In this document: piece by piece, positions 1,703 to 40,237 of the stretch | Numbering within the stretch: position 1 is the first letter of the stretch | How the letters are laid out: the number at the start of each line of letters is the position of its first letter | IMG/VR virus record: IMGVR_UViG_3300032315_001715 | Location: 372,001-436,000 of that record | Length of the DNA stretch: 64,000 nt | Reading direction: 5' to 3' (one strand) | The notes under the pieces: model-generated | What the model saw: the letters and a program-made list of their open reading frames with translations, nothing else | What the model was told of the DNA's origin: nothing | The model's database searches: none | Translations under genes and position numbers: made by a program

Positions 1703-1854
1703 CACAACCAGAGGACAACGCCGTGCATGCAACATCACCTAGCGTAAACCCGTTGACATGGTCATAACGCTAGGTCGATCTCTATGGAAAATCGCGTTTA
1801 TCCAACATATATTTTCAATGAGATCAACAAGTTAATCTCAGCACCATCTAGCTC

Positions 1855-3033
1855 ATGCAGCATGGTAGCAATGTGACTAATCATACATCCTCAACCTGGT
1901 GCGGTCGCTTGTTTGGTGACTACCTGATGAATTGGTCACAGGGACAGTGGAGGTCCTGCTGCAAGATGCCCTGGGATGTTGTTCAATCTCACGGCACTTC
2001 TCCGTGGCAGCAGGATCGCATCGATCAACGCAGATCTGCCGCATTGAACGGCATTCGTCATCAAGATTGCATATCTTGCTGGCAAGAGGAAGATCGAGGA
2101 TTGCCCAGCTTTCGACAAACCGCCGCAAGCTCAAAGATCATGAATCGATTCATATTGAATCTAGGAAATACCTGCAATCTAGCCTGCACATATTGCTACA
2201 GCGGTAACAGTTCAATATGGGCAAACAAAAACGGAAACCATCCACGGATACCGACCGATATATTGTTACAGCAGGAAACATTTTGGAAATGGTGGGATGC
2301 TGAAAAGAACCGCATAGAACGATTGGTGATTTCAGGTGGAGAACCCAGCCTAATGTCCGAAATGTATTCCTGGGTTGACAGGGCCGGCATTTCTGGAAAG
2401 GAAATATTGTTCAATACCAACGCAGCATCAAACCACCATTGGTGGTCAAGATTCCTGTCAAAGATGGATGAATTATCAGATGATAATCGCATCATAATAC
2501 GTGTTAGCATGGATGCGGTTGGTGATCGATTTGAATGGATACGCACCGGTCTTGATTGGGCGGTGTTTGAACGCAACATGCGAGAACTTGGGTCGTTAGC
2601 ATCGACCAAGAACATACTGGTTCGTATCAGCCCGACCCTGTCGTGCCTAACGCTTGAAGGCGTGCTGGAAACCGCGACATGGACCAACCGATTCTCACGA
2701 TCGATTGATAACGGATCAAAGATCGTGCAATATGACGCATTTAGCATGGTCAGTGATCCCATGCAGCAACGTCCAGATCCGTGGCTTGGTTACTTTAAAA
2801 GTGATATGGAAGAGATCATGGAGATGATGTCCGATGCTAACATTAATCAAGATGCCGTGATGCAGATACGGGGATTAATGAGGCTGGCTGACAAGGTTAT
2901 CCCAACGGTTGAAAATGCCAGCGGGGTTGTTAGCACCATGGATTCACTGGAGAAACAATGGAATAAGTCTCCTTGGTCGGCAGCATTTCCCAGGCTGCAT
3001 CGGGCCGTGTCAGCAACCCTGTCATTGGGTTAA
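1855..3033 (+). CDS. radical SAM protein with N-terminal twitch/SPASM-like Cys cluster
   Basis: CNLACTYC, ISGGEP, CC...CISCWQEE. Confidence 0.9.
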   Translation: MQHGSNVTNHTSSTWCGRLFGDYLMNWSQGQWRSCCKMPWDVVQSHGTSPWQQDRIDQRRSAALNGIRHQDCISCWQEEDRGLPSFRQTAASSKIMNRFILNLGNTCNLACTYCYSGNSSIWANKNGNHPRIPTDILLQQETFWKWWDAEKNRIERLVISGGEPSLMSEMYSWVDRAGISGKEILFNTNAASNHHWWSRFLSKMDELSDDNRIIIRVSMDAVGDRFEWIRTGLDWAVFERNMRELGSLASTKNILVRISPTLSCLTLEGVLETATWTNRFSRSIDNGSKIVQYDAFSMVSDPMQQRPDPWLGYFKSDMEEIMEMMSDANINQDAVMQIRGLMRLADKVIPTVENASGVVSTMDSLEKQWNKSPWSAAFPRLHRAVSATLSLG

Positions 3034-3034
3034 A

Positions 3035-3694
3035 TCAACCCATGCCGGGATCGTCCCGGCCAACGCATGCAAATCCCCATGCACGTTCCCGGCAATGGAA
3101 ACACTTACCACATCGTGGGCCGGATATGTGTTGTGTGCAGGATCTTGCCAAGCGGAACATTTCCTCTTGGTTGTTTTCAAACACCAGGTCAACCGTGTGA
3201 AACTTGTAAAGATGCAGGAATGGTAGCCATACCATTCCGCCTTCGCCCTTGCTTCGTTCCGGCCGCCCAATGGGATTGCCCTGGGCATCCTTTGGCCATC
3301 GGCTGTAATCCCAGGTAGGCGTGGCGTTTGACGCATAGAATACATAGTTGATTTCCGGATATTTTCTAGAGATTTCTCTCCACGCGGCTTCTCCCTGATC
3401 CCTGTGATGTATGTCTGGATTACCAACCTCGATCGGCTGCGGTAGATCATACGGGAACTGGGTGTTGATGTAGTTGACCATCGCTGCTGAGCTTTGTACC
3501 ATTTCATTCTTCTTAAGCATGACGAATGGTTGTATGTTTGGCTTCCAGCCGAGCTCACCGTGTGCCTTGAGCAAGAGATACAGCAATATACCGCTGTCTA
3601 TTCCGCCGCTGAGCATCATCCCGTATCTGCGATTTTCCTCGATGTTGAGCCGTATCTCGGTCCCATCGATCCTTGACTTGATGATCCTAATCAT
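3035..3694 (-). CDS. QueC-like PP-loop ATPase
   Basis: LSGGIDS PP-loop and C-terminal SC...CGKCFHCRER. Confidence 0.75.
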   Translation of the reverse strand: MIRIIKSRIDGTEIRLNIEENRRYGMMLSGGIDSGILLYLLLKAHGELGWKPNIQPFVMLKKNEMVQSSAAMVNYINTQFPYDLPQPIEVGNPDIHHRDQGEAAWREISRKYPEINYVFYASNATPTWDYSRWPKDAQGNPIGRPERSKGEGGMVWLPFLHLYKFHTVDLVFENNQEEMFRLARSCTQHISGPRCGKCFHCRERAWGFACVGRDDPGMG

Positions 3695-13955: not shown

Positions 13956-14033
13956 TGGTCTCGGTGGCAAGATTCGAACTTGCGGTCTTCTGGTCCCAAA
14001 CCAGACGCGATAACCAGGCTTCGCTACACCGAG
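13956..14033 (-). tRNA. tRNA-Pro(TGG)
   Basis: loop TT-TGG-GA, CCA; 5' end overlaps HNH stop codon. Confidence 0.92.
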
Positions 14034-14602
14034 TTTTTGAACTTCTTCAAATATAATTCTATAGCCGATTGAACCATATGTCTATATCGACTATGGACAT
14101 ATTGATGATGTGTTGGGCACATCGGAATCAAGTTAGCTGGGTCATTGTTGTTATGATTGTGGTCATAGTGATGAACTGATACTATCTTGTCCTCACCGCA
14201 GATGATGCATGCCTTTTTGTGGTACTCAAAGCAGGTACTGCGATATTGGTCGTCACTCCAGTTGCCATTATTTTCGCCACGTCGAAAGTGTTTGTTTGCA
14301 CATGATCGACTACAAGTACCTTTTGATTTCTTGTAGTTTTTGACCGGATTATCGCATACCAAACACTTTACTGTATTAACCGGATTCAAATAGCATTCAA
14401 CTTCATGACTGCGTAAATTTGGAACACTAACTAATTTAGTGCAATACTGACAATTTTTCTTAGTTGCGTTGATACTCGCCCATCCTCCGGATCCTTTGTT
14501 GGACAGATGAGATCTTAACGCCTTTGCACTACAATAAATTTTACCATTATTTGGACTCGTAAATGTTCCATCAAGATTTTGATATTGTATAAGGTCTATC
14601 AT
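14024..14602 (-). CDS. HNH endonuclease
   Basis: CIICG...VHHYDHNHNNNDPANLIPMCPTHH, Zn fingers. Confidence 0.92.
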   Translation of the reverse strand: MIDLIQYQNLDGTFTSPNNGKIYCSAKALRSHLSNKGSGGWASINATKKNCQYCTKLVSVPNLRSHEVECYLNPVNTVKCLVCDNPVKNYKKSKGTCSRSCANKHFRRGENNGNWSDDQYRSTCFEYHKKACIICGEDKIVSVHHYDHNHNNNDPANLIPMCPTHHQYVHSRYRHMVQSAIELYLKKFKNSV

Positions 14603-14625
14603 AATGCTATTTATGCTCGGAGCGA

Positions 14626-14661
14626 CAAAGCAGGCGCACTACCAAGCTGTGCTACACCCCG
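14626..14661 (-). pseudogene. 5' half of tRNA-Pro broken in the anticodon
   Basis: CGGGGTGTAGCACAGCTTGGTAGTGCGCCTGCTTTG then unrelated sequence. Confidence 0.85.
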
Positions 14662-14712
14662 TTATTTAATACTACGGCCAGTTGATCGTTTTTGCAAGCA
14701 TATTTACTAACG

Positions 14713-30534: not shown

Positions 30535-31086
30535 TTAATAAAGATCCTTGATCTTTTCAAGAATCGATTTCATCTCAACAACGTCGCTGTGCTTGGTGAT
30601 GCTCACGGCATTGTCCATGTGTCGGTGCATCTTGGCTCGACGCTCGTCCATGATCAAATCAAACAGCGCATTGTTGAGGTTAAATCGGTCATCAAGCATG
30701 CGGATGATCCGTCCGTTTGGCAATAGTATGTCCCGCACGCTTTCAACGTAGCGATAAGCTGATTCAGCGTCCATGCCATGTTGTACCATGATGCCGATGG
30801 CAGCAGCGGTGCTGCGGCTGAGACCTTGATGGCAATGCACCAACAACCGATCGCCAGCTTGCAGGTTCTTGGAAAAATCAAGAATGGCATCAAGGTGTTG
30901 TTCATTTGGCAGCACCCACTCGTCCCTCAATTGGCTTTCAACATCATGGAGATGAATGACTAGATGGTTCTCGCAGGTAAACGGCAAGTTTACACCCGGA
31001 TCCACCATGCTGATGGTGTGCGTGGGCCAGCCATTGTGGGCCCACCTGCCCGCTTCGAATATACCGCCAATCTTTAATTCAAACAT
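30535..31086 (-). CDS. dual-specificity/tyrosine phosphatase family
   Basis: VHCHQGLSRS (CX5R). Confidence 0.9.
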   Translation of the reverse strand: MFELKIGGIFEAGRWAHNGWPTHTISMVDPGVNLPFTCENHLVIHLHDVESQLRDEWVLPNEQHLDAILDFSKNLQAGDRLLVHCHQGLSRSTAAAIGIMVQHGMDAESAYRYVESVRDILLPNGRIIRMLDDRFNLNNALFDLIMDERRAKMHRHMDNAVSITKHSDVVEMKSILEKIKDLY

Positions 31087-31176
31087 GCACGCCCCCGGTG
31101 AAATGATGCAGGGTATTACCAGCGTTAAGTCTGCGAGCTGGAGGAGTTTGACCAATGCACCTCCAAAGGTTCCTCG

Positions 31177-31388: not shown

Positions 31389-31506
31389 TGGCTCCTTCTG
31401 CTGGACTCGAACCAGCAACCACCTGATTAATCTTGGACCTGATGGAGTTGCACCATCCAATCTATTGATCCCACAGTCAGGGGCTCTACCATTGAGCTAA
31501 GAAGGA
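31389..31506 (-). tRNA. tRNA-Asn(GTT) with ~43-nt anticodon-loop insert (31430-31472)
   Basis: U1-A72, G73; removing the insert gives CCTGA-CT-GTT-AA-TCAGG. Confidence 0.85.
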
Positions 31507-33221: not shown

Positions 33222-33315
33222 TGGCGGAGAGCAGTGGTCTTGATCCACATGCCGGTTTCTAGCCGGCACCCACTCCTTAGCAGGGAGGGACGAACACTCG
33301 TTCGCTTTACTCTCC
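33222..33315 (-). tRNA. tRNA-Ser(GCT), 6-bp D stem
   Basis: loop CT-GCT-AA, long variable arm. Confidence 0.82.
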
Positions 33316-33320
33316 AAAAT

Positions 33321-33396
33321 TGGCTGCCCACCCTCGGTTCGAACGAGGAACCTCCTGTTTCAGAGACAGGCGATCTGCCAGTTGATCTAGTGGGCA
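33321..33396 (-). tRNA. tRNA-Gln(CTG)
   Basis: U1-A72, loop CT-CTG-AA. Confidence 0.9.
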
Positions 33397-33405
33397 ATAA
33401 ATTAT

Positions 33406-33978
33406 TTATTTTTCGATAAAATACAGAGCTGTTTGAATGAATTGCTCTTTATCTTTGACACATTCTTTCCATTCTATTCGAAGTGTTTGCCATCCTTGCT
33501 CTAAAAGCCATGCATCTCGTTTTGCATCACTCTCTCTGGTGTTTTCGTGAGTGCCGCCGTCGATTTCAATGCATTTCTTTATTTCTGGCCAAGCAAAATC
33601 AAGTGAATAAATTCCAAATGGGTATTCCGCAATGTAGTTTTTATTCTCAAATCTTTTATCAATCACAGATTCGAACCACTGCTCTGGATAACTTTTTGGA
33701 CGCCCTTTGAAATTTTTTCCCAAAGTAGGGTATGTCCCCTCCTTCAAACGTCTCAGCATGTGATGTCTGAGCTTGATTTTGGTTTCATCTGAGTGCTTCT
33801 GAGGAGGTCGATGTTTCCTGCTCATCTTTTGAGCTTCGCTTTTAGAACGAGGTGTGAACAATCCATTTTTGATTGCCTTGTTGATCGTGTTCAAGGTTGG
33901 TCCTAATTCTCGCATTGGGACCCCACTATCATATAGGCTCTGTAATTCTTTCCAATTAAACGGAGTTTTGTTTCTCAT
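33406..33978 (-). CDS. DUF559/Vsr-like endonuclease with NUMOD3
   Basis: KHSDETKIKL; YSLDFAW, IEIDGGTH, DAKRDAWLLEQGWQTLRI. Confidence 0.88.
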   Translation of the reverse strand: MRNKTPFNWKELQSLYDSGVPMRELGPTLNTINKAIKNGLFTPRSKSEAQKMSRKHRPPQKHSDETKIKLRHHMLRRLKEGTYPTLGKNFKGRPKSYPEQWFESVIDKRFENKNYIAEYPFGIYSLDFAWPEIKKCIEIDGGTHENTRESDAKRDAWLLEQGWQTLRIEWKECVKDKEQFIQTALYFIEK

Positions 33979-33992
33979 GACTTATTTATGAT

Positions 33993-34025
33993 AAGTCGGT
34001 TGTTCTACCATTAAACTAATCCCCA
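33993..34025 (-). pseudogene. 5' half of tRNA-Gln broken in the anticodon
   Basis: TGGGGATTAGTTTAATGGTAGAACAACCGACTT then ATCATAAATA. Confidence 0.8.
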
Positions 34026-34032
34026 AAATTAT

Positions 34033-34108
34033 TGGCTGCCCGTGATGGTTTCGAACCACCAACATCGAGATTCAAAGTCTCGCGTTCTGCCAATTGAACT
34101 AACGGGCA
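34033..34108 (-). tRNA. tRNA-Gln(TTG)
   Basis: loop CT-TTG-AA. Confidence 0.92.
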
Positions 34109-34118
34109 ATAAACTCTT

Positions 34119-34195
34119 TGGTGTTCTCGACGGGATTCGAACCCATGACCTTCGGCTTAGGAGGCAGACGCTCTATCCAGCTGAGCTACGAGAAC
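34119..34195 (-). tRNA. tRNA-Arg(CCT)
   Basis: loop CT-CCT-AA. Confidence 0.9.
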
Positions 34196-35482: not shown

Positions 35483-35983
35483 TCAAGGATTGTTGAGTTT
35501 CCACCAACGATTAATGGAATCAGCACCAATCTCATCACACACCTCAACAAGCTTGCCGCCGAGGCCAAGGATATCATCAAAGTGTTGGGCTAACAGCATG
35601 TTCGGGCATGCTCGCGGACGATCCGCTTTTAGCCATTCCACACCTTCCTCAAGCCTATCAACACCGTTGGCCTGCAACCACAGCGCCAGCGCCGACGCCG
35701 TTGAGCGGCATGCACCAGCAAAGCAATGCACCACCACCCGGGCATCTCCGGGCAAACGCTGGCCAAACTCTAGGATCGATTCTGCGTGCTCTCTCGTCGG
35801 TGCATACAGCTTGGCAGGATCCTCTTCGTCATCAAAGTTGATGGCAAAGTGATTCTTGGCATCGATGCGTGGCGGACGGAATACCCGATCACCAACATCC
35901 AGCATGGTGATGAGATGCGTGGCAGCAAACCGCTTGGCGGTCTTTTTGACCTCGCTCTTTCCACAAACGGTAAACTCGGGCAC
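35483..35983 (-). CDS. dual-specificity/tyrosine phosphatase family
   Basis: VHCFAGACRS (CX5R); GTG start with GGAGG. Confidence 0.9.
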   Translation of the reverse strand: MPEFTVCGKSEVKKTAKRFAATHLITMLDVGDRVFRPPRIDAKNHFAINFDDEEDPAKLYAPTREHAESILEFGQRLPGDARVVVHCFAGACRSTASALALWLQANGVDRLEEGVEWLKADRPRACPNMLLAQHFDDILGLGGKLVEVCDEIGADSINRWWKLNNP

Positions 35984-36368: not shown

Positions 36369-37043
36369 TCAACGCCTATTTTTTATCGTTCTTCCTTTGA
36401 TCCATCCGACTGGTATAGGATCAGATTTTTTAATTTTTACAGATTTTTGACCATCTGTTATCCACATTGTGTCAAACTGACTATTGGATTTGCCAAATCC
36501 TCGCCCTTTTGATGATTCGGACATTTTAGATCTAGTTTCAGCCGAATGTGTCTTTCCTTTGAAAGATGCAAATATGTCAGGCGTATATTTTGATTTAATG
36601 GTTTCTTGCCATTTTTTTGAACGATTTGCAACTCTTTCTGTATCTAATAGAAAAAGTCTTAGACCCTCCTTGGCTTTTTCTTCTATCCCTCTAGATTTTG
36701 CTACTTTCATAGCCTTTTGATTTTTTTCTTTTCTTAACGATTCATTTGAATTGATATAACCAAATCCGCCATGTCCTCCTGGACATAAATTATATGTATC
36801 TGGTCTTGCACACATTTCTTCTGTCACAAGTTCTTTTTCTTTGTCGTTCATTTCTTTTTCACAAGAAAAGACGTGTAAGATTTCTTTGGAAAAATTTTCA
36901 ATACCATATTTGTCAATTGCAAGTTTTATGAGCTTGCCAGATCCAAAATATTCATCATTAAGGTCAGCAGTTTTATGCTTTCCTATATAAATCTTGCTGT
37001 TAAGGAGATTAGTAATTTTGTATATTATGAAGAACATAAACAC
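36369..37043 (-). CDS. GIY-YIG homing endonuclease (Seg-like) with NUMOD3
   Basis: IIYKITN...IYIGKH...YFGSG, YNLCPGG, GKTHSAETRSKMS. Confidence 0.95.
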   Translation of the reverse strand: MFMFFIIYKITNLLNSKIYIGKHKTADLNDEYFGSGKLIKLAIDKYGIENFSKEILHVFSCEKEMNDKEKELVTEEMCARPDTYNLCPGGHGGFGYINSNESLRKEKNQKAMKVAKSRGIEEKAKEGLRLFLLDTERVANRSKKWQETIKSKYTPDIFASFKGKTHSAETRSKMSESSKGRGFGKSNSQFDTMWITDGQKSVKIKKSDPIPVGWIKGRTIKNRR

Positions 37044-37380: not shown

Positions 37381-37968
37381 CTATATCAACCCTAAACTTT
37401 TGAGCTTGGTTTTATCCCATACCTCGCAGACGACATCTGGATATAACTGGCGCCAAAGCTCGAACTTTTCTTTGTTTGCTTTTCGCCAATAACCCTTGAC
37501 CTCTATGATTTTTCCGCAGGATAAAACAAAGTCAGGTCTGTATGACCTATTTTTTGATAACAGGAAAACCTTCTTGCTGTAATCCCATTTGATACCTTGG
37601 CTATCGAGGTAAGACGCAACTTTCACCTCCCAGGATGAATCCATCCTGATGCCATTATAATAACTTTGTCTATCTCCTCTATGTTTGGCGTTATTGTTAC
37701 CTCTCATAGATTCGGATATTTTAGCTTTGGTGTCATCGGTATGTTTCACCAACGAATTGAGCTTTCTGCCTTTTATCTTTAAGGCATGCCCTAGAATCCT
37801 TGAATCTGTTTCCTTGCTAAGTCCTTTGTTCCAGCTAACATGCGCTGTCTTGAGACGTGCTCGATAACCGGGACATTTGTAATAAACTGGTTGGCAGCAC
37901 CACCCGCTCCATTTAGAGCGAGGTGGATACGAAGCGGTGTCTCCGCAATACTTGCATGTGTTGTTCAT
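37381..37968 (-). CDS. PD-(D/E)xK endonuclease with NUMOD3
   Basis: KHTDDTKAKIS; DSSWE, YRPDFVL...IEVKGY. Confidence 0.88.
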   Translation of the reverse strand: MNNTCKYCGDTASYPPRSKWSGWCCQPVYYKCPGYRARLKTAHVSWNKGLSKETDSRILGHALKIKGRKLNSLVKHTDDTKAKISESMRGNNNAKHRGDRQSYYNGIRMDSSWEVKVASYLDSQGIKWDYSKKVFLLSKNRSYRPDFVLSCGKIIEVKGYWRKANKEKFELWRQLYPDVVCEVWDKTKLKSLGLI

Positions 37969-37984
37969 GAAAGTATTTATGCAA

Positions 37985-38021
37985 ACAGTCTGCTCCAACC
38001 CTCCAACGTTGGCGCTTCCCC
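37985..38021 (-). pseudogene. 5' half of tRNA-Tyr broken in the anticodon (3' remnant at 37359-37380)
   Basis: GGGGAAGCGCCAACGTTGGAGGGTTGGAGCAGACTGT; after the ORF stop AATCTG...CCCCACCA. Confidence 0.75.
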
Positions 38022-39562: not shown

Positions 39563-40150
39563 TTAACGAGGAGCAAACGGATCTATTATCACCGGGCAAT
39601 CGCCTCGTTGCATGATGTTTTCATCATGTAGATCAAAATCAATTGCTGAATTGGTACTAACAACATTAGCCAGTAGCTCGATTGCATGTAAGAAATCCGG
39701 CCATTTTTTAATGAAATGCTCGATGTGAGATTTGAGTTTCTCGTCAGTCATGTTGCTGAGATAGTCTCGCCATTTAGGCTCGTCGATGTATCTCAAAAAC
39801 CAATCAGTTGCTATATGATCAGGGTCGGTTCGAACATATTCCCAGGGTGACAGCATTTCTAATCTCAATGCACGGATACCTGGGACCAAAGTAACCGGTA
39901 ATCCTCTAAACTTTGGAAAATGTGGATTATCCTGATGTTTTCGGGCTAGTTCGACAAATTTAGCGTAACCTATATCTGCCTCGTCGTACAGCTTTAGAAC
40001 ATAATTCAAGTTCGGATGTTGCCAAACACTGCCAAATGTGCCGTCTCCCAGCATTTCGAATCCATGCTTGAGAAGCTTTTTCTTCGCGCTGTCTGTGTTT
40101 GTGATGTCTTGTCGCAGGCTATCTGCGCCCACAAGTTCATTGAGTTTCAT
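39563..40150 (-). CDS. protein-kinase-like protein
   Basis: LGDGTFGSVW, VLK, DLHDENIM, IIDP. Confidence 0.85.
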   Translation of the reverse strand: MKLNELVGADSLRQDITNTDSAKKKLLKHGFEMLGDGTFGSVWQHPNLNYVLKLYDEADIGYAKFVELARKHQDNPHFPKFRGLPVTLVPGIRALRLEMLSPWEYVRTDPDHIATDWFLRYIDEPKWRDYLSNMTDEKLKSHIEHFIKKWPDFLHAIELLANVVSTNSAIDFDLHDENIMQRGDCPVIIDPFAPR

Positions 40151-40162
40151 GATGCTATTTAT

Positions 40163-40237
40163 TGGTCAGCGTGGGGAATTTTGCGATCCCGGCCTCCAGG
40201 CTCCCGACCTGGCACTCTTCTCCTGAGCTACACGCTG
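40163..40237 (-). tRNA. tRNA-Pro(GGG)
   Basis: C1-G72, loop TC-GGG-AG. Confidence 0.8.

What the first reader, a model, noticed from the sequence alone, without database searches (positions are those of the whole stretch)
33321..34108. Same architecture with a DUF559-type endonuclease in tRNA-Gln
A tRNA-Gln 5' half (33993-34025) stops at CT-T, then ATAAATA, the endonuclease ORF and an intact tRNA-Gln(CTG); an intact Gln(TTG) is upstream. A different nuclease fold uses the same anticodon breakpoint as the Pro case, which suggests convergence.
Basis: partly seen in the sequence, partly recalled or inferred. Interest (0 to 1): 0.65.

Follow-up and report, generated by a model that had tools for sequence, protein, structure and literature searches.

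The report
Homing endonuclease module splitting tRNA-Gln gene
In the tRNA array of a 453-kb phage, a selfish nuclease gene sits inside a glutamine tRNA gene broken at its anticodon loop and is followed by a whole replacement glutamine tRNA; the same compact module recurs in many other phages, so it looks like an undescribed way for homing endonucleases to colonise tRNA genes without an intron.

Summary
On the minus strand lie an intact tRNA-Gln(UUG), 6 nt, a 33-nt tRNA 5' half ending in the anticodon loop (C32-U33-U34), an ATAAATA motif, a 190-aa ORF, 10 nt, and an intact tRNA-Gln(CUG).

The fragment is tRNA-Gln. Its first 24 nt match exactly only tRNA-Gln(CUG) genes of marine Hyphomicrobiales.

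The ORF is a Vsr-like nuclease: Pfam DUF559, an EDxHD-type set of invariant residues, and a fold closest to the I-Bth0305I catalytic domain.

The layout recurs:
- Ten of eleven distinct relatives in one tRNA-Gln-linked clade (44-79% identity) carry an orphan tRNA-Gln 5' piece, nine of them broken at C32-G36.
- Between loci, DNA similarity starts at the orphan's first base and ends at the 3' end of the downstream tRNA. Flanks are unrelated.
- One locus keeps the displaced 3' remnant after the intact tRNA.
- Orphans are far better conserved than the ORF's third codon positions.
- Sister lineages show the same layout with tRNA-Asn and tRNA-Lys. An unrelated HNH family does so with Pro and Val.

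Best reading: an intron-less homing module inserted in the anticodon loop. No cleavage assay was possible and no syntenic empty site was found. It is a new variant of a known kind.

The parts
34033..34108 (-). Intact tRNA-Gln(UUG), 6 nt upstream of the orphan; CCA encoded
   Evidence: ARAGORN; Rfam tRNA 64.3 bits
33993..34025 (-). Orphan 5' half of a tRNA-Gln gene (acceptor 5' strand, D arm, anticodon-stem 5' strand, C32-U33-U34), of the bacterial host-like type
   Evidence: Read directly. Its first 24 nt are exact in tRNA-Gln(CUG) of marine Hyphomicrobiales. Not called as a tRNA by ARAGORN or Rfam. Homologous orphans lie at the same place in L030, L031, L032, L034, L036, L044 and L046.
33983..33989 (-). 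ATAAATA gene-start motif 4 nt before the ATG (promoter-like; function inferred)
   Evidence: 100 copies in the genome against 34-69 for six permuted heptamers. 25 copies have an ATG 4-5 nt downstream and 28 precede ORFs of 50 aa or more. The same motif at the same spacing lies before the homologous ORFs in other phages.
33406..33978 (-). 190-aa free-standing homing-endonuclease-like gene: N-terminal helical DNA-binding-like region, a NUMOD3-like motif, and a C-terminal Vsr-like (DUF559/EDxHD-type) nuclease domain
   Evidence: Pfam DUF559 E=1.1e-12 over aa 103-186. Invariant E99, D127, E138, D140, H144 and D151 in 26 homologues. AlphaFold2 model, mean pLDDT 87. Best domain-level matches are 3r3p (I-Bth0305I), target TM-score 0.77, and 3hrl (DUF559), 0.72. 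Single copy in the genome.
33321..33396 (-). Intact tRNA-Gln(CUG), 10 nt after the stop codon; the module's own tRNA
   Evidence: ARAGORN; Rfam 47.5 bits. A tRNA-Gln(CUG) starts before the ORF's end or directly after its stop codon in the nine other readable loci that carry one: L030, L031, L032, L033, L034, L036, L044/45, L046, L047.

Best explanation
This is a compact mobile module made of an orphan tRNA-Gln 5' half, a gene-start motif, a Vsr-like homing endonuclease gene and an intact tRNA-Gln(CUG). In effect it is a tRNA-Gln gene invaded at its anticodon loop, without an intron.

Proposed mechanism:
1. The endonuclease is made from its own ATAAATA-type start signal.
2. In a co-infecting phage that lacks the module, it recognises the DNA coding the anticodon arm of a tRNA-Gln gene and cuts there.
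3. The break is repaired by copying the donor. The donor's orphan 5' half serves as the left homology arm, and the 3' part of its intact tRNA-Gln as the right arm.
4. The recipient ends up with the same layout. The target is destroyed by the insertion, and the intact, sequence-diverged tRNA-Gln(CUG) supplies glutamine decoding.

Shown here: the anatomy, the Gln identity of the fragment, the nuclease family and fold, recurrence of the layout, the module's boundaries, and the lineage-specific link to tRNA identity.

Inferred: DNA cleavage, the exact cut site, the arm usage, the promoter role of ATAAATA, and how the carrier genome avoids self-cutting.
For: 1. Anatomy of the locus.

2. The fragment is tRNA-Gln of a type that exists uninterrupted in bacteria and in other phages: L005-L029 and L037-L039.

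3. Recurrence. Every relative examined at 44-79% identity lies beside a tRNA-Gln. Ten of the eleven distinct members of the clade carry an orphan Gln 5' piece. In nine it ends at C32-G36, followed by the start motif, 4-5 nt and the ATG; L053 breaks after the whole anticodon arm.

4. Insertion inside a gene. In L032 the T arm and acceptor 3' strand complementary to the orphan lie 10 nt after the intact tRNA. In L030 the second tRNA's 3' strand pairs 7/7 with the orphan but only 5/7 with its own 5' strand. In L044 the intact tRNA has one acceptor mismatch (6/7 pairs), and by eye its 3' end resembles the L032 remnant.

5. Discrete module. L031 2956-3641 matches L044 655-1342 at 80%. L034 2456-3171 matches L036 2231-2945 at 70%. 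These blocks run from orphan base 1 to the tRNA's 3' end, with no similarity in the flanks and different neighbouring genes.

6. Orphans are 0.70-0.88 identical among the host-like type (0.65-0.88 over all such pairs), while the ORFs' third codon positions are 0.32-0.62 identical (0.32-0.51 in all pairs but the closest one). The orphans are therefore young or maintained, not decaying relics.

7. Specificity. All 10 Gln-linked proteins fall in one group of the tree, with 0 of 500 shuffles as clustered. The other 59 proteins include 27 linked to tRNA-Asn and none to Gln. Asn- and Lys-type orphans break in the anticodon loop too (L113, L123, L106). By my reading, orphan and adjacent tRNA share amino-acid identity in all 13 readable cases.

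8. The nuclease is of a proven homing family: fold match to I-Bth0305I and an EDxHD-like invariant set.
Against: - No biochemical evidence for cleavage or its position.
- No syntenic relative lacking the module was found. Close relatives of this phage are absent from the collections apart from one near-identical 31-kb contig.
- In the window the orphan does not match the downstream tRNA: only 4 of 7 acceptor pairs. No 3' remnant is present either, so this copy has been rearranged since insertion.
- L047 has the ORF and tRNA-Gln(CUG) but no orphan.
- L036 keeps, 49 nt after the module, an intact tRNA-Gln(UUG) with the same anticodon-stem strand as the orphan. A simple 'immune because the target is diverged' account does not explain this.
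- Some loci share a downstream gene (L030 and L031), so part of the recurrence may be vertical inheritance.
Confidence: 0.65

Rival explanations
1. Ancient relic. One old insertion into a tRNA-Gln gene in the ancestor of a clade of large phages has been inherited vertically. The ORF is now inactive or domesticated. The orphan persists only because gene conversion from intact tRNA-Gln genes keeps refreshing it.
For: L030 and L031 share a downstream gene (BPL_N-like), so they are related genomes. There is only one copy per genome. No empty site was found.
Against: The flanks of the module differ between most loci, and similarity stops at the module's ends. Catalytic residues are invariant across 26 homologues down to 32% identity. 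Sister lineages show the same break in other tRNA species, which needs independent insertions.
Confidence: 0.15
2. By-product of recombination. The endonuclease cuts somewhere else in or near tRNA genes, as T4 SegB does at the T-loop region. The orphan half and chimeric tRNAs are debris of break-induced recombination or segmental duplication between paralogous tRNA-Gln genes, not the footprint of the homing site.
For: SegB cleaves within tRNA genes and drives duplication of a tRNA-plus-segB unit through microhomology between the tRNA's 5' end and segB's 3' end (PMC2330249; PMC13096335). Chimeric tRNAs exist in L030 and L044. The window has tandem Gln genes.
Against: The break lies at C32-G36 in nine separate Gln loci with different sequences, and in the anticodon loop of Asn and Lys orphans. 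The start motif and ATG follow the break directly. Debris from random recombination should break at varied positions.
Confidence: 0.12
3. RNA-level pair. The protein acts on tRNA-Gln molecules (for example the host's) as an anticodon-directed nuclease or binder, and the linked, diverged tRNA-Gln is the resistant replacement.
For: The orphan is host-like, while the window's intact Gln tRNAs are diverged. Vsr-like folds also occur in RNA-binding proteins: mitoribosomal hits rank near the top of the fold search, and FASTKD4 is described as Vsr-like in the title of PMC11879112. Phage tRNAs that evade tRNA-targeting nucleases are known (PMC10264068, listed).
Against: The break is in the DNA, so a DNA event happened at that place. 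The closest structural and sequence relatives are DNA endonucleases (I-Bth0305I, DUF559, Vsr). The modular architecture with a NUMOD3-like motif is typical of DNA homing enzymes.
Confidence: 0.04
4. Intron or split gene. The 5' half is the first exon of a tRNA-Gln that is completed by cis- or trans-splicing, either with a group I intron carrying the ORF or as a split tRNA.
For: Group I introns with endonuclease genes do sit in bacterial tRNA anticodon loops (own knowledge: tRNA-fMet of Synechocystis with I-Ssp6803I).
Against: There was no group I intron match at E up to 10 in 33250-34150. Only 14 nt lie before the ORF and 10 nt after it, which leaves no room for a ribozyme core. No matching 3' half was seen in the window.
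Confidence: 0.01

Closest known systems
I-Bth0305I and the EDxHD (Vsr-like) homing endonuclease family (PMC3239194)
   Same: The C-terminal nuclease domain has the same fold: 3r3p gives a target TM-score of 0.77 and rmsd 2.4 A over 96 columns. An equivalent set of invariant acidic and histidine residues is present. Both are modular, with an N-terminal DNA-binding region, and both are phage-borne.
   Different: I-Bth0305I lies in a group I intron in recA, and the host gene is restored by splicing. This enzyme is free-standing, lies in a broken tRNA gene, and comes with a whole second tRNA. Sequence similarity to 3r3p was not detectable by phmmer. The N-terminal modules differ: a NUMOD3-like motif here, NUMOD2 there.
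T4 SegB, a GIY-YIG free-standing homing endonuclease in the T4 tRNA gene cluster (PMC2330249; PMC13096335)
   Same: A selfish nuclease gene embedded in a phage tRNA array. It cuts within tRNA genes and carries neighbouring tRNA genes with it. Its 3' end and a tRNA's 5' end interact in rearrangements.
   Different: The fold is different. SegB recognises the T-stem-loop-coding motif shared by many tRNAs, not one tRNA's anticodon arm. It sits between genes and leaves no orphan half, and it has no lineage-specific tie to one amino-acid identity.
I-Ssp6803I, a PD-(D/E)XK homing endonuclease in the group I intron of tRNA-fMet (own knowledge; the PD-(D/E)-XK family is listed among homing families in PMC6083498)
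   Same: A restriction-fold homing enzyme whose element is inserted in the anticodon loop of a tRNA gene.
   Different: It is intron-borne, so the tRNA is repaired at the RNA level. Here there is no intron, and function is supplied by a separate intact tRNA gene.
Integrase-mediated islands and prophages in tRNA genes (own knowledge; tRNA gene fragments in prokaryotes are discussed in PMC9897764)
   Same: An inserted element flanked by a partial tRNA copy on one side and an intact tRNA on the other.
   Different: Those use tyrosine integrases and usually duplicate the 3' part of the tRNA. This element has no integrase, is 0.7 kb long, duplicates the 5' half, and breaks in the anticodon loop.

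Membership tests
Pfam DUF559 (PF04480) | Profile match above the curated gathering score | tested here: met
   48.2 bits against a cut-off of 20.6, E=1.1e-12, aa 103-186. Weak phmmer match to the DUF559 structure 3hrl, E=0.01.
EDxHD / Vsr-like homing endonucleases | Vsr-like nuclease fold | tested here: met
   Foldseek probability 1.00. 3r3p gives target TM-score 0.76-0.77, 3hrl 0.72, and Vsr (1cw0, 1vsr) weaker matches. The model's mean pLDDT is 87.
EDxHD / Vsr-like homing endonucleases | Conserved composite catalytic motif: Glu, Asp, a variable residue, His, Asp | tested here: inconclusive
   E99, D127, D140, H144 and D151 are invariant in 26 homologues and occur in the right order. The motif is defined in PMC3239194. 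I did not superpose residues on 3r3p or Vsr, so the one-to-one mapping is inferred.
EDxHD / Vsr-like homing endonucleases | Site-specific double-strand cleavage of the uninterrupted target next to the insertion point | not testable with these tools
   Needs purified protein and DNA substrates.
Free-standing homing endonuclease gene (mobile) | The same element in different genomic contexts, with sharp boundaries | tested here: met
   Similarity blocks run from orphan base 1 to the tRNA's 3' end, with unrelated flanks. Neighbouring genes differ.
Free-standing homing endonuclease gene (mobile) | Presence/absence polymorphism at one syntenic site (empty allele) | tested here: inconclusive
   Only one near-identical contig exists in IMG/VR. 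The metagenome scan gave 0 hits. Uninterrupted genes of the same tRNA type exist in other phages, but these are not syntenic.
Group I intron-encoded endonuclease | Ribozyme core flanking the ORF, and a 3' exon | tested here: not met
   No intron family matched at E up to 10. Only 14 nt and 10 nt of non-coding DNA flank the ORF. No 3' half was seen in the window.
Functional tRNA (for the 33-nt fragment) | Complete cloverleaf | tested here: not met
   Not called by ARAGORN or Rfam. The sequence stops at position 34.

The most novel reading that the evidence does not exclude
A widespread, so far undescribed class of intron-less 'tRNA-splitting' homing modules. Lineages of Vsr-like endonucleases (and, convergently, of HNH endonucleases) would each be specialised on one tRNA identity: Gln, Asn, Lys, Pro or Val. 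Each invades that tRNA gene at the anticodon loop, uses the two halves of the tRNA gene itself as portable homology arms, and brings a diverged replacement tRNA whose first bases encode the end of the nuclease. Such modules would be a main force shuffling, duplicating and diversifying tRNA arrays of large phages. Because the orphan here is host-like, they might also cut host tRNA genes.
Probability: 0.4. Interest if true: 0.75.

Novelty: new variant of a known kind. Interest (0 to 1): 0.62.

Why it matters
Homing endonucleases normally spare their host gene in one of two ways. They ride in a self-splicing intron or intein, or they sit between genes. Here the element appears to break an essential-type gene outright and compensate by carrying a second, diverged copy of it.

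If confirmed, this would do four things:
- Add a third strategy to that list.
- Explain orphan tRNA halves and near-duplicate isoacceptors in the tRNA arrays of large phages.
- Help explain how such arrays gain and exchange tRNAs.
- Provide a set of natural nucleases whose DNA specificity tracks the anticodon arm of individual tRNA genes, which would be useful for studying how specificity evolves in the little-studied Vsr-like homing family.

The host-like orphan also gives a host clue (marine Hyphomicrobiales) for an uncultured 453-kb phage.

Tried and rejected
- Split tRNA or missing 3' half. I searched the genome for a T arm followed by the complementary acceptor strand. In the window, the only exact matches to that strand lie in T loops of other tRNAs or in the orphan's own reverse complement. 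The looser pattern was uninformative.
- Group I intron. No Rfam match at E up to 10.
- The fragment as a copy of a neighbouring Gln gene. Rejected: local alignment scores are only 26 and 16, and the acceptor strands differ.
- Close relatives or empty sites. Exact-pattern scans of viral contigs with the orphan, with the 3' end of Gln(UUG) and with the 5' part of Gln(CUG) found only the same phage's 31-kb contig. Megablast against isolated phages found only short matches under single tRNA genes (1% of the query). The metagenome scan with a 27-mer of the orphan gave 0 hits.
- A 5'-half profile (nhmmer) was too insensitive for a census. It put 14 of 81 upstream segments above all 162 controls, but it missed the window's own orphan and several obvious ones. 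Those were read by eye.
- ATAAATA as part of the nuclease target. Rejected in favour of a general gene-start motif.
- The careful maximum-likelihood tree did not finish. The quick tree was used.
- No other genetic code was applied.

Full report
**Setting.** The window is bases 372001-436000 of a single 452,799-bp virus record. It has 49% G+C and CheckV estimates it as complete. ARAGORN tRNA genes in the window, all on the minus strand. Rfam adds five more. Small ORFs lie between the tRNAs, and several look like nucleases: GIY-YIG/NUMOD3, NUMOD3 with an endonuclease I-like domain, and HNH. No isolated phage is close.

**The observation.** Read on the minus strand, the locus contains, in order:
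- tRNA-Gln(UUG), 34108..34033
- 6 nt
- a 33-nt piece, 34025..33993
- ATC
- ATAAATA, 33989..33983
- AGTC
- an ORF, 33978..33406
- 10 nt
- tRNA-Gln(CUG), 33396..33321

The 33-nt piece has an acceptor 5' strand, a complete D arm and the 5' strand of an anticodon stem, then C-U-U. There it ends. Neither ARAGORN nor Rfam calls it a tRNA.

Its first 24 nt were scanned against one genome from each of 185,579 prokaryote species and matched 25 stretches exactly. Every intact match is a tRNA-Gln(CUG) gene of Pseudovibrio, Cohaesibacter, Polycladidibacter, Mesorhizobium or unnamed Hyphomicrobiales. The piece is therefore a real tRNA-Gln 5' half of bacterial, probably host-like, type.

It is not a duplicate of either neighbouring intact Gln gene, whose acceptor strands are different. 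No matching 3' half was seen in the window.

**The ORF.**
- It matches Pfam DUF559 well above threshold.
- In an alignment of 26 homologues down to 32% identity, E99, D127, E138, D140, H144 and D151 are invariant, as are a P-E motif and several aromatic residues.
- This is the pattern described for the Vsr-like 'EDxHD' homing endonucleases: Glu, Asp, a variable residue, His, Asp (PMC3239194).
- An AlphaFold2 model has mean pLDDT 87. Its C-terminal domain is closest to the I-Bth0305I catalytic domain (3r3p: probability 1.00, target TM-score 0.77, rmsd 2.4 A) and to a DUF559 structure (3hrl: 0.72).
- The N-terminal half is helical. It carries a NUMOD3-like motif that Pfam recognises in some homologues.
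- The genome holds one copy.

**Recurrence of the layout.** The word-index protein search found 135 relatives. I read the DNA around those of 44-71% identity. I then read 80 further loci from a metagenome scan.

All relatives of 44% identity or more lie next to a tRNA-Gln. The results for the Gln-linked clade:
- In L030, L031, L032/L033, L034, L035/L036, L044/L045 and L046, the ORF is preceded by a tRNA-Gln 5' half that ends within C32-G36. A (C/G/T)ATAAATA or CTAAATA motif follows directly, then 4-5 nt, then the ATG.
- In those loci a tRNA-Gln(CUG) follows the ORF. It usually starts 10 nt before the ORF's end, so that the tRNA's U8-A9-G10 serves as the stop codon TAG.
- L048 has a degenerate version on both sides.
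- L053 has a Gln(CUG)-type orphan that breaks after the whole anticodon arm, and a Gln(UUG) downstream.
- L047 has the ORF and the tRNA but no orphan.

**Evidence that the ORF lies inside a tRNA gene.**
- In L032, 10 nt after the intact tRNA-Gln(CUG), there is a variable-loop/T-arm/acceptor 3' piece. It is complementary to the orphan's acceptor strand and aligns with uninterrupted phage and bacterial tRNA-Gln genes. Only the 3' strand of the anticodon stem is missing.
- In L030 the second tRNA after the ORF pairs 7/7 with the orphan's acceptor strand but only 5/7 with its own 5' strand.
- In L044 the intact tRNA has one acceptor mismatch. By eye, its 3' end resembles the L032 remnant. Both this tRNA and the L030 one look like recombinant tRNAs.
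- Uninterrupted genes of the same type occur in other phages: L037/L038 (UUG) and L039 (CUG).

**A discrete module.** Pairwise blastn shows that similarity between loci begins at the orphan's first base and ends at the intact tRNA's 3' end:

| Pair | Matched ranges | Identity |
|---|---|---|
| L031 / L044 | 2956-3641 / 655-1342 | 80% |
| L034 / L036 | 2456-3171 / 2231-2945 | 70% |

The window compared with L032 behaves likewise. Nothing matches in the flanks, and the neighbouring genes differ. The conserved unit therefore occupies exactly one tRNA-gene slot.

**The orphans are not decaying.** Among the ORFs, third-codon-position identity is 0.32-0.51 in all pairs except the closest one (0.62). 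That is close to saturation. The orphans of the host-like type remain 0.70-0.88 identical in most pairs, 0.65 at the lowest. Either they are maintained, or they are repeatedly made anew from functional tRNA-Gln genes. The second is what active homing predicts.

**Specificity by lineage.** In a quick maximum-likelihood tree of 70 proteins, all 10 Gln-linked proteins fall in one group of 11; the eleventh is L048. None of 500 label shuffles was as clustered. The other 59 proteins include 27 linked to tRNA-Asn(GUU) and none linked to Gln.

In that second group:
- L113 and L123 have tRNA-Asn 5' halves broken after G34-U35, followed by the ORF and an intact tRNA-Asn.
- L106 shows the same with tRNA-Lys(CUU).

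By my reading, orphan and adjacent tRNA share amino-acid identity wherever both can be read: 13 of 13 cases.

**The Pro case.** In the window, a tRNA-Pro 5' half (14665..14630) breaks after U34-G35. It is followed by CATAAATA, then an ORF (14602..14024) with an HNH motif, which overlaps an intact, different tRNA-Pro(UGG).
- The protein has more than 170 relatives.
- In L040/L041 the promoter-like stretch, the ORF and the overlapping tRNA-Pro are conserved up to the tRNA's 3' end, but without an orphan.
- Next to it, a second HNH gene follows a tRNA 5' piece and overlaps a tRNA-Val.
- L042 has an intact tRNA-Pro directly upstream instead.

**The ATAAATA motif.** The genome has 100 copies, against 34-69 for six permuted heptamers. 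Twenty-five copies have an ATG 4-5 nt downstream, and 28 precede ORFs of 50 aa or more. It is a general gene-start signal in this phage and its kin. It resembles the T4 late promoter TATAAATA (own knowledge), and the short spacing suggests leaderless or nearly leaderless messages (inference). In the module it marks the left end of the inserted DNA.

**Mechanism proposed.**
1. The enzyme cuts the anticodon-arm-coding DNA of a tRNA-Gln gene in a genome that lacks the module.
2. Repair copies the donor, pairing the broken gene's 5' half with the donor's orphan and its 3' half with the donor's intact tRNA-Gln.
3. The product repeats the donor layout.

This model accounts for the module's boundaries, the conserved orphans, the recombinant tRNAs, and the constant amino-acid identity of the downstream tRNA.

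In 8 of 8 loci the anticodon stem of the adjacent tRNA-Gln(CUG) differs from the orphan's. That would fit resistance of the carrier genome. L036, however, also keeps an intact tRNA-Gln(UUG) with the orphan's stem, so self-protection is unresolved.

In the window itself the downstream tRNA has an unrelated acceptor stem and is separated from the ORF by 10 nt. This copy has evidently been reshuffled after insertion.

**What is known.**
- Nuclease genes in phage tRNA clusters are known. T4 SegB cuts the T-loop-coding motif of tRNA genes and spreads neighbouring tRNA genes (PMC2330249). It can also amplify a tRNA-segB unit (PMC13096335).
- HNH genes accompany bacterial tRNA arrays (PMC8421152).
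- The Vsr-like homing family is known from introns and inteins and as free-standing genes (PMC3239194).
- Five full-text searches found no description of an intron-less insertion in the anticodon loop coupled to a linked replacement tRNA and an orphan 5' half. The library does not cover all journals.

I file the finding as a new variant of a known kind.

**Limits.**
- Nothing here shows cleavage.
- No syntenic empty allele was found.
- The tree is the quick version.
- Orphan calls outside the nhmmer test were made by eye.

Noticed in passing
window 31392-31506 (-): A tRNA-Asn(GUU) gene (Rfam 56.5 bits, 115 nt) carries an insertion of about 42 nt in its anticodon loop, right after C32-U33-G34-U35. 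This is the same position where Asn-type orphans of the nuclease family break (L113, L123). It could be a small intron, or a scar left by a lost module.
   Followed up: partly
window ~33222-33315 (-): Directly after tRNA-Gln(CUG) lies an uncalled tRNA-like cloverleaf. It has a long variable arm, a GCU anticodon-like loop and a GCCA end. Minimum free energy is -41.8 kcal/mol, z = -3.3. ARAGORN and Rfam do not report it.
   Followed up: partly
whole genome; e.g. window 33983-33989, 14610-14616, 40156-40162 (-): ATAAATA followed by 4-5 nt and an ATG is an enriched gene-start motif: 100 copies, 25 at that spacing. It resembles the T4 late promoter and suggests leaderless transcripts. The same motif precedes homologous ORFs in other phages.
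   Followed up: partly
window 40163-40237 (-): An uncalled tRNA-Pro-like gene with a degenerate T loop lies 7 nt after tRNA-Pro(UGG). It is followed at once by ATAAATA, GCATC and the ATG of a 195-aa ORF of unknown family (39563-40150).
   Followed up: no
G000:C1:321051-321206 and 111695-112033 (outside the window): Two adjacent tRNA genes with anticodon CUA (amber suppressor type) and a tmRNA gene. Whether TAG is reassigned in part of the genome was not examined.
   Followed up: no
window 36369-37043, 37381-37998, 30535-31155, 35483-35983 (-): Further ORFs are interleaved with the tRNAs: one GIY-YIG SegE-like with NUMOD3, one NUMOD3 with an endonuclease I-like domain, and two dual-specificity-phosphatase-like proteins.
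   Followed up: no
window 33993-34025 (-) versus L005-L029: The orphan's exact 24-nt match is confined to tRNA-Gln(CUG) of marine Hyphomicrobiales (Pseudovibrio, Cohaesibacter, Polycladidibacter and others). This is a clue to the host of this uncultured phage.
   Followed up: partly
L010 6852-6880 (+); L026 129-155 (+): In Polycladidibacter hongkongensis and Pseudovibrio flavus, the same tRNA-Gln 5' part is followed after about 27 nt by unrelated sequence. In L026 this runs into a masked stretch. These are truncated tRNA-Gln copies in bacterial chromosomes.
   Followed up: no
L043 ~1775-1880 (+); L040 1850-2510 (+): In L043 the tRNA-Pro that overlaps the HNH ORF's end has an insertion of about 28 nt in its anticodon loop. 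In L040 a second HNH gene follows a tRNA 5' piece and overlaps tRNA-Val(UAC).
   Followed up: no
L030, L031, L044-L047, L065-L069, L106, L115, L119, L121, L123: In many family members the ORF ends 10 nt inside the downstream tRNA. The tRNA's conserved U8-A9-G10 serves as the TAG stop, and the acceptor 5' strand encodes the last residues.
   Followed up: partly
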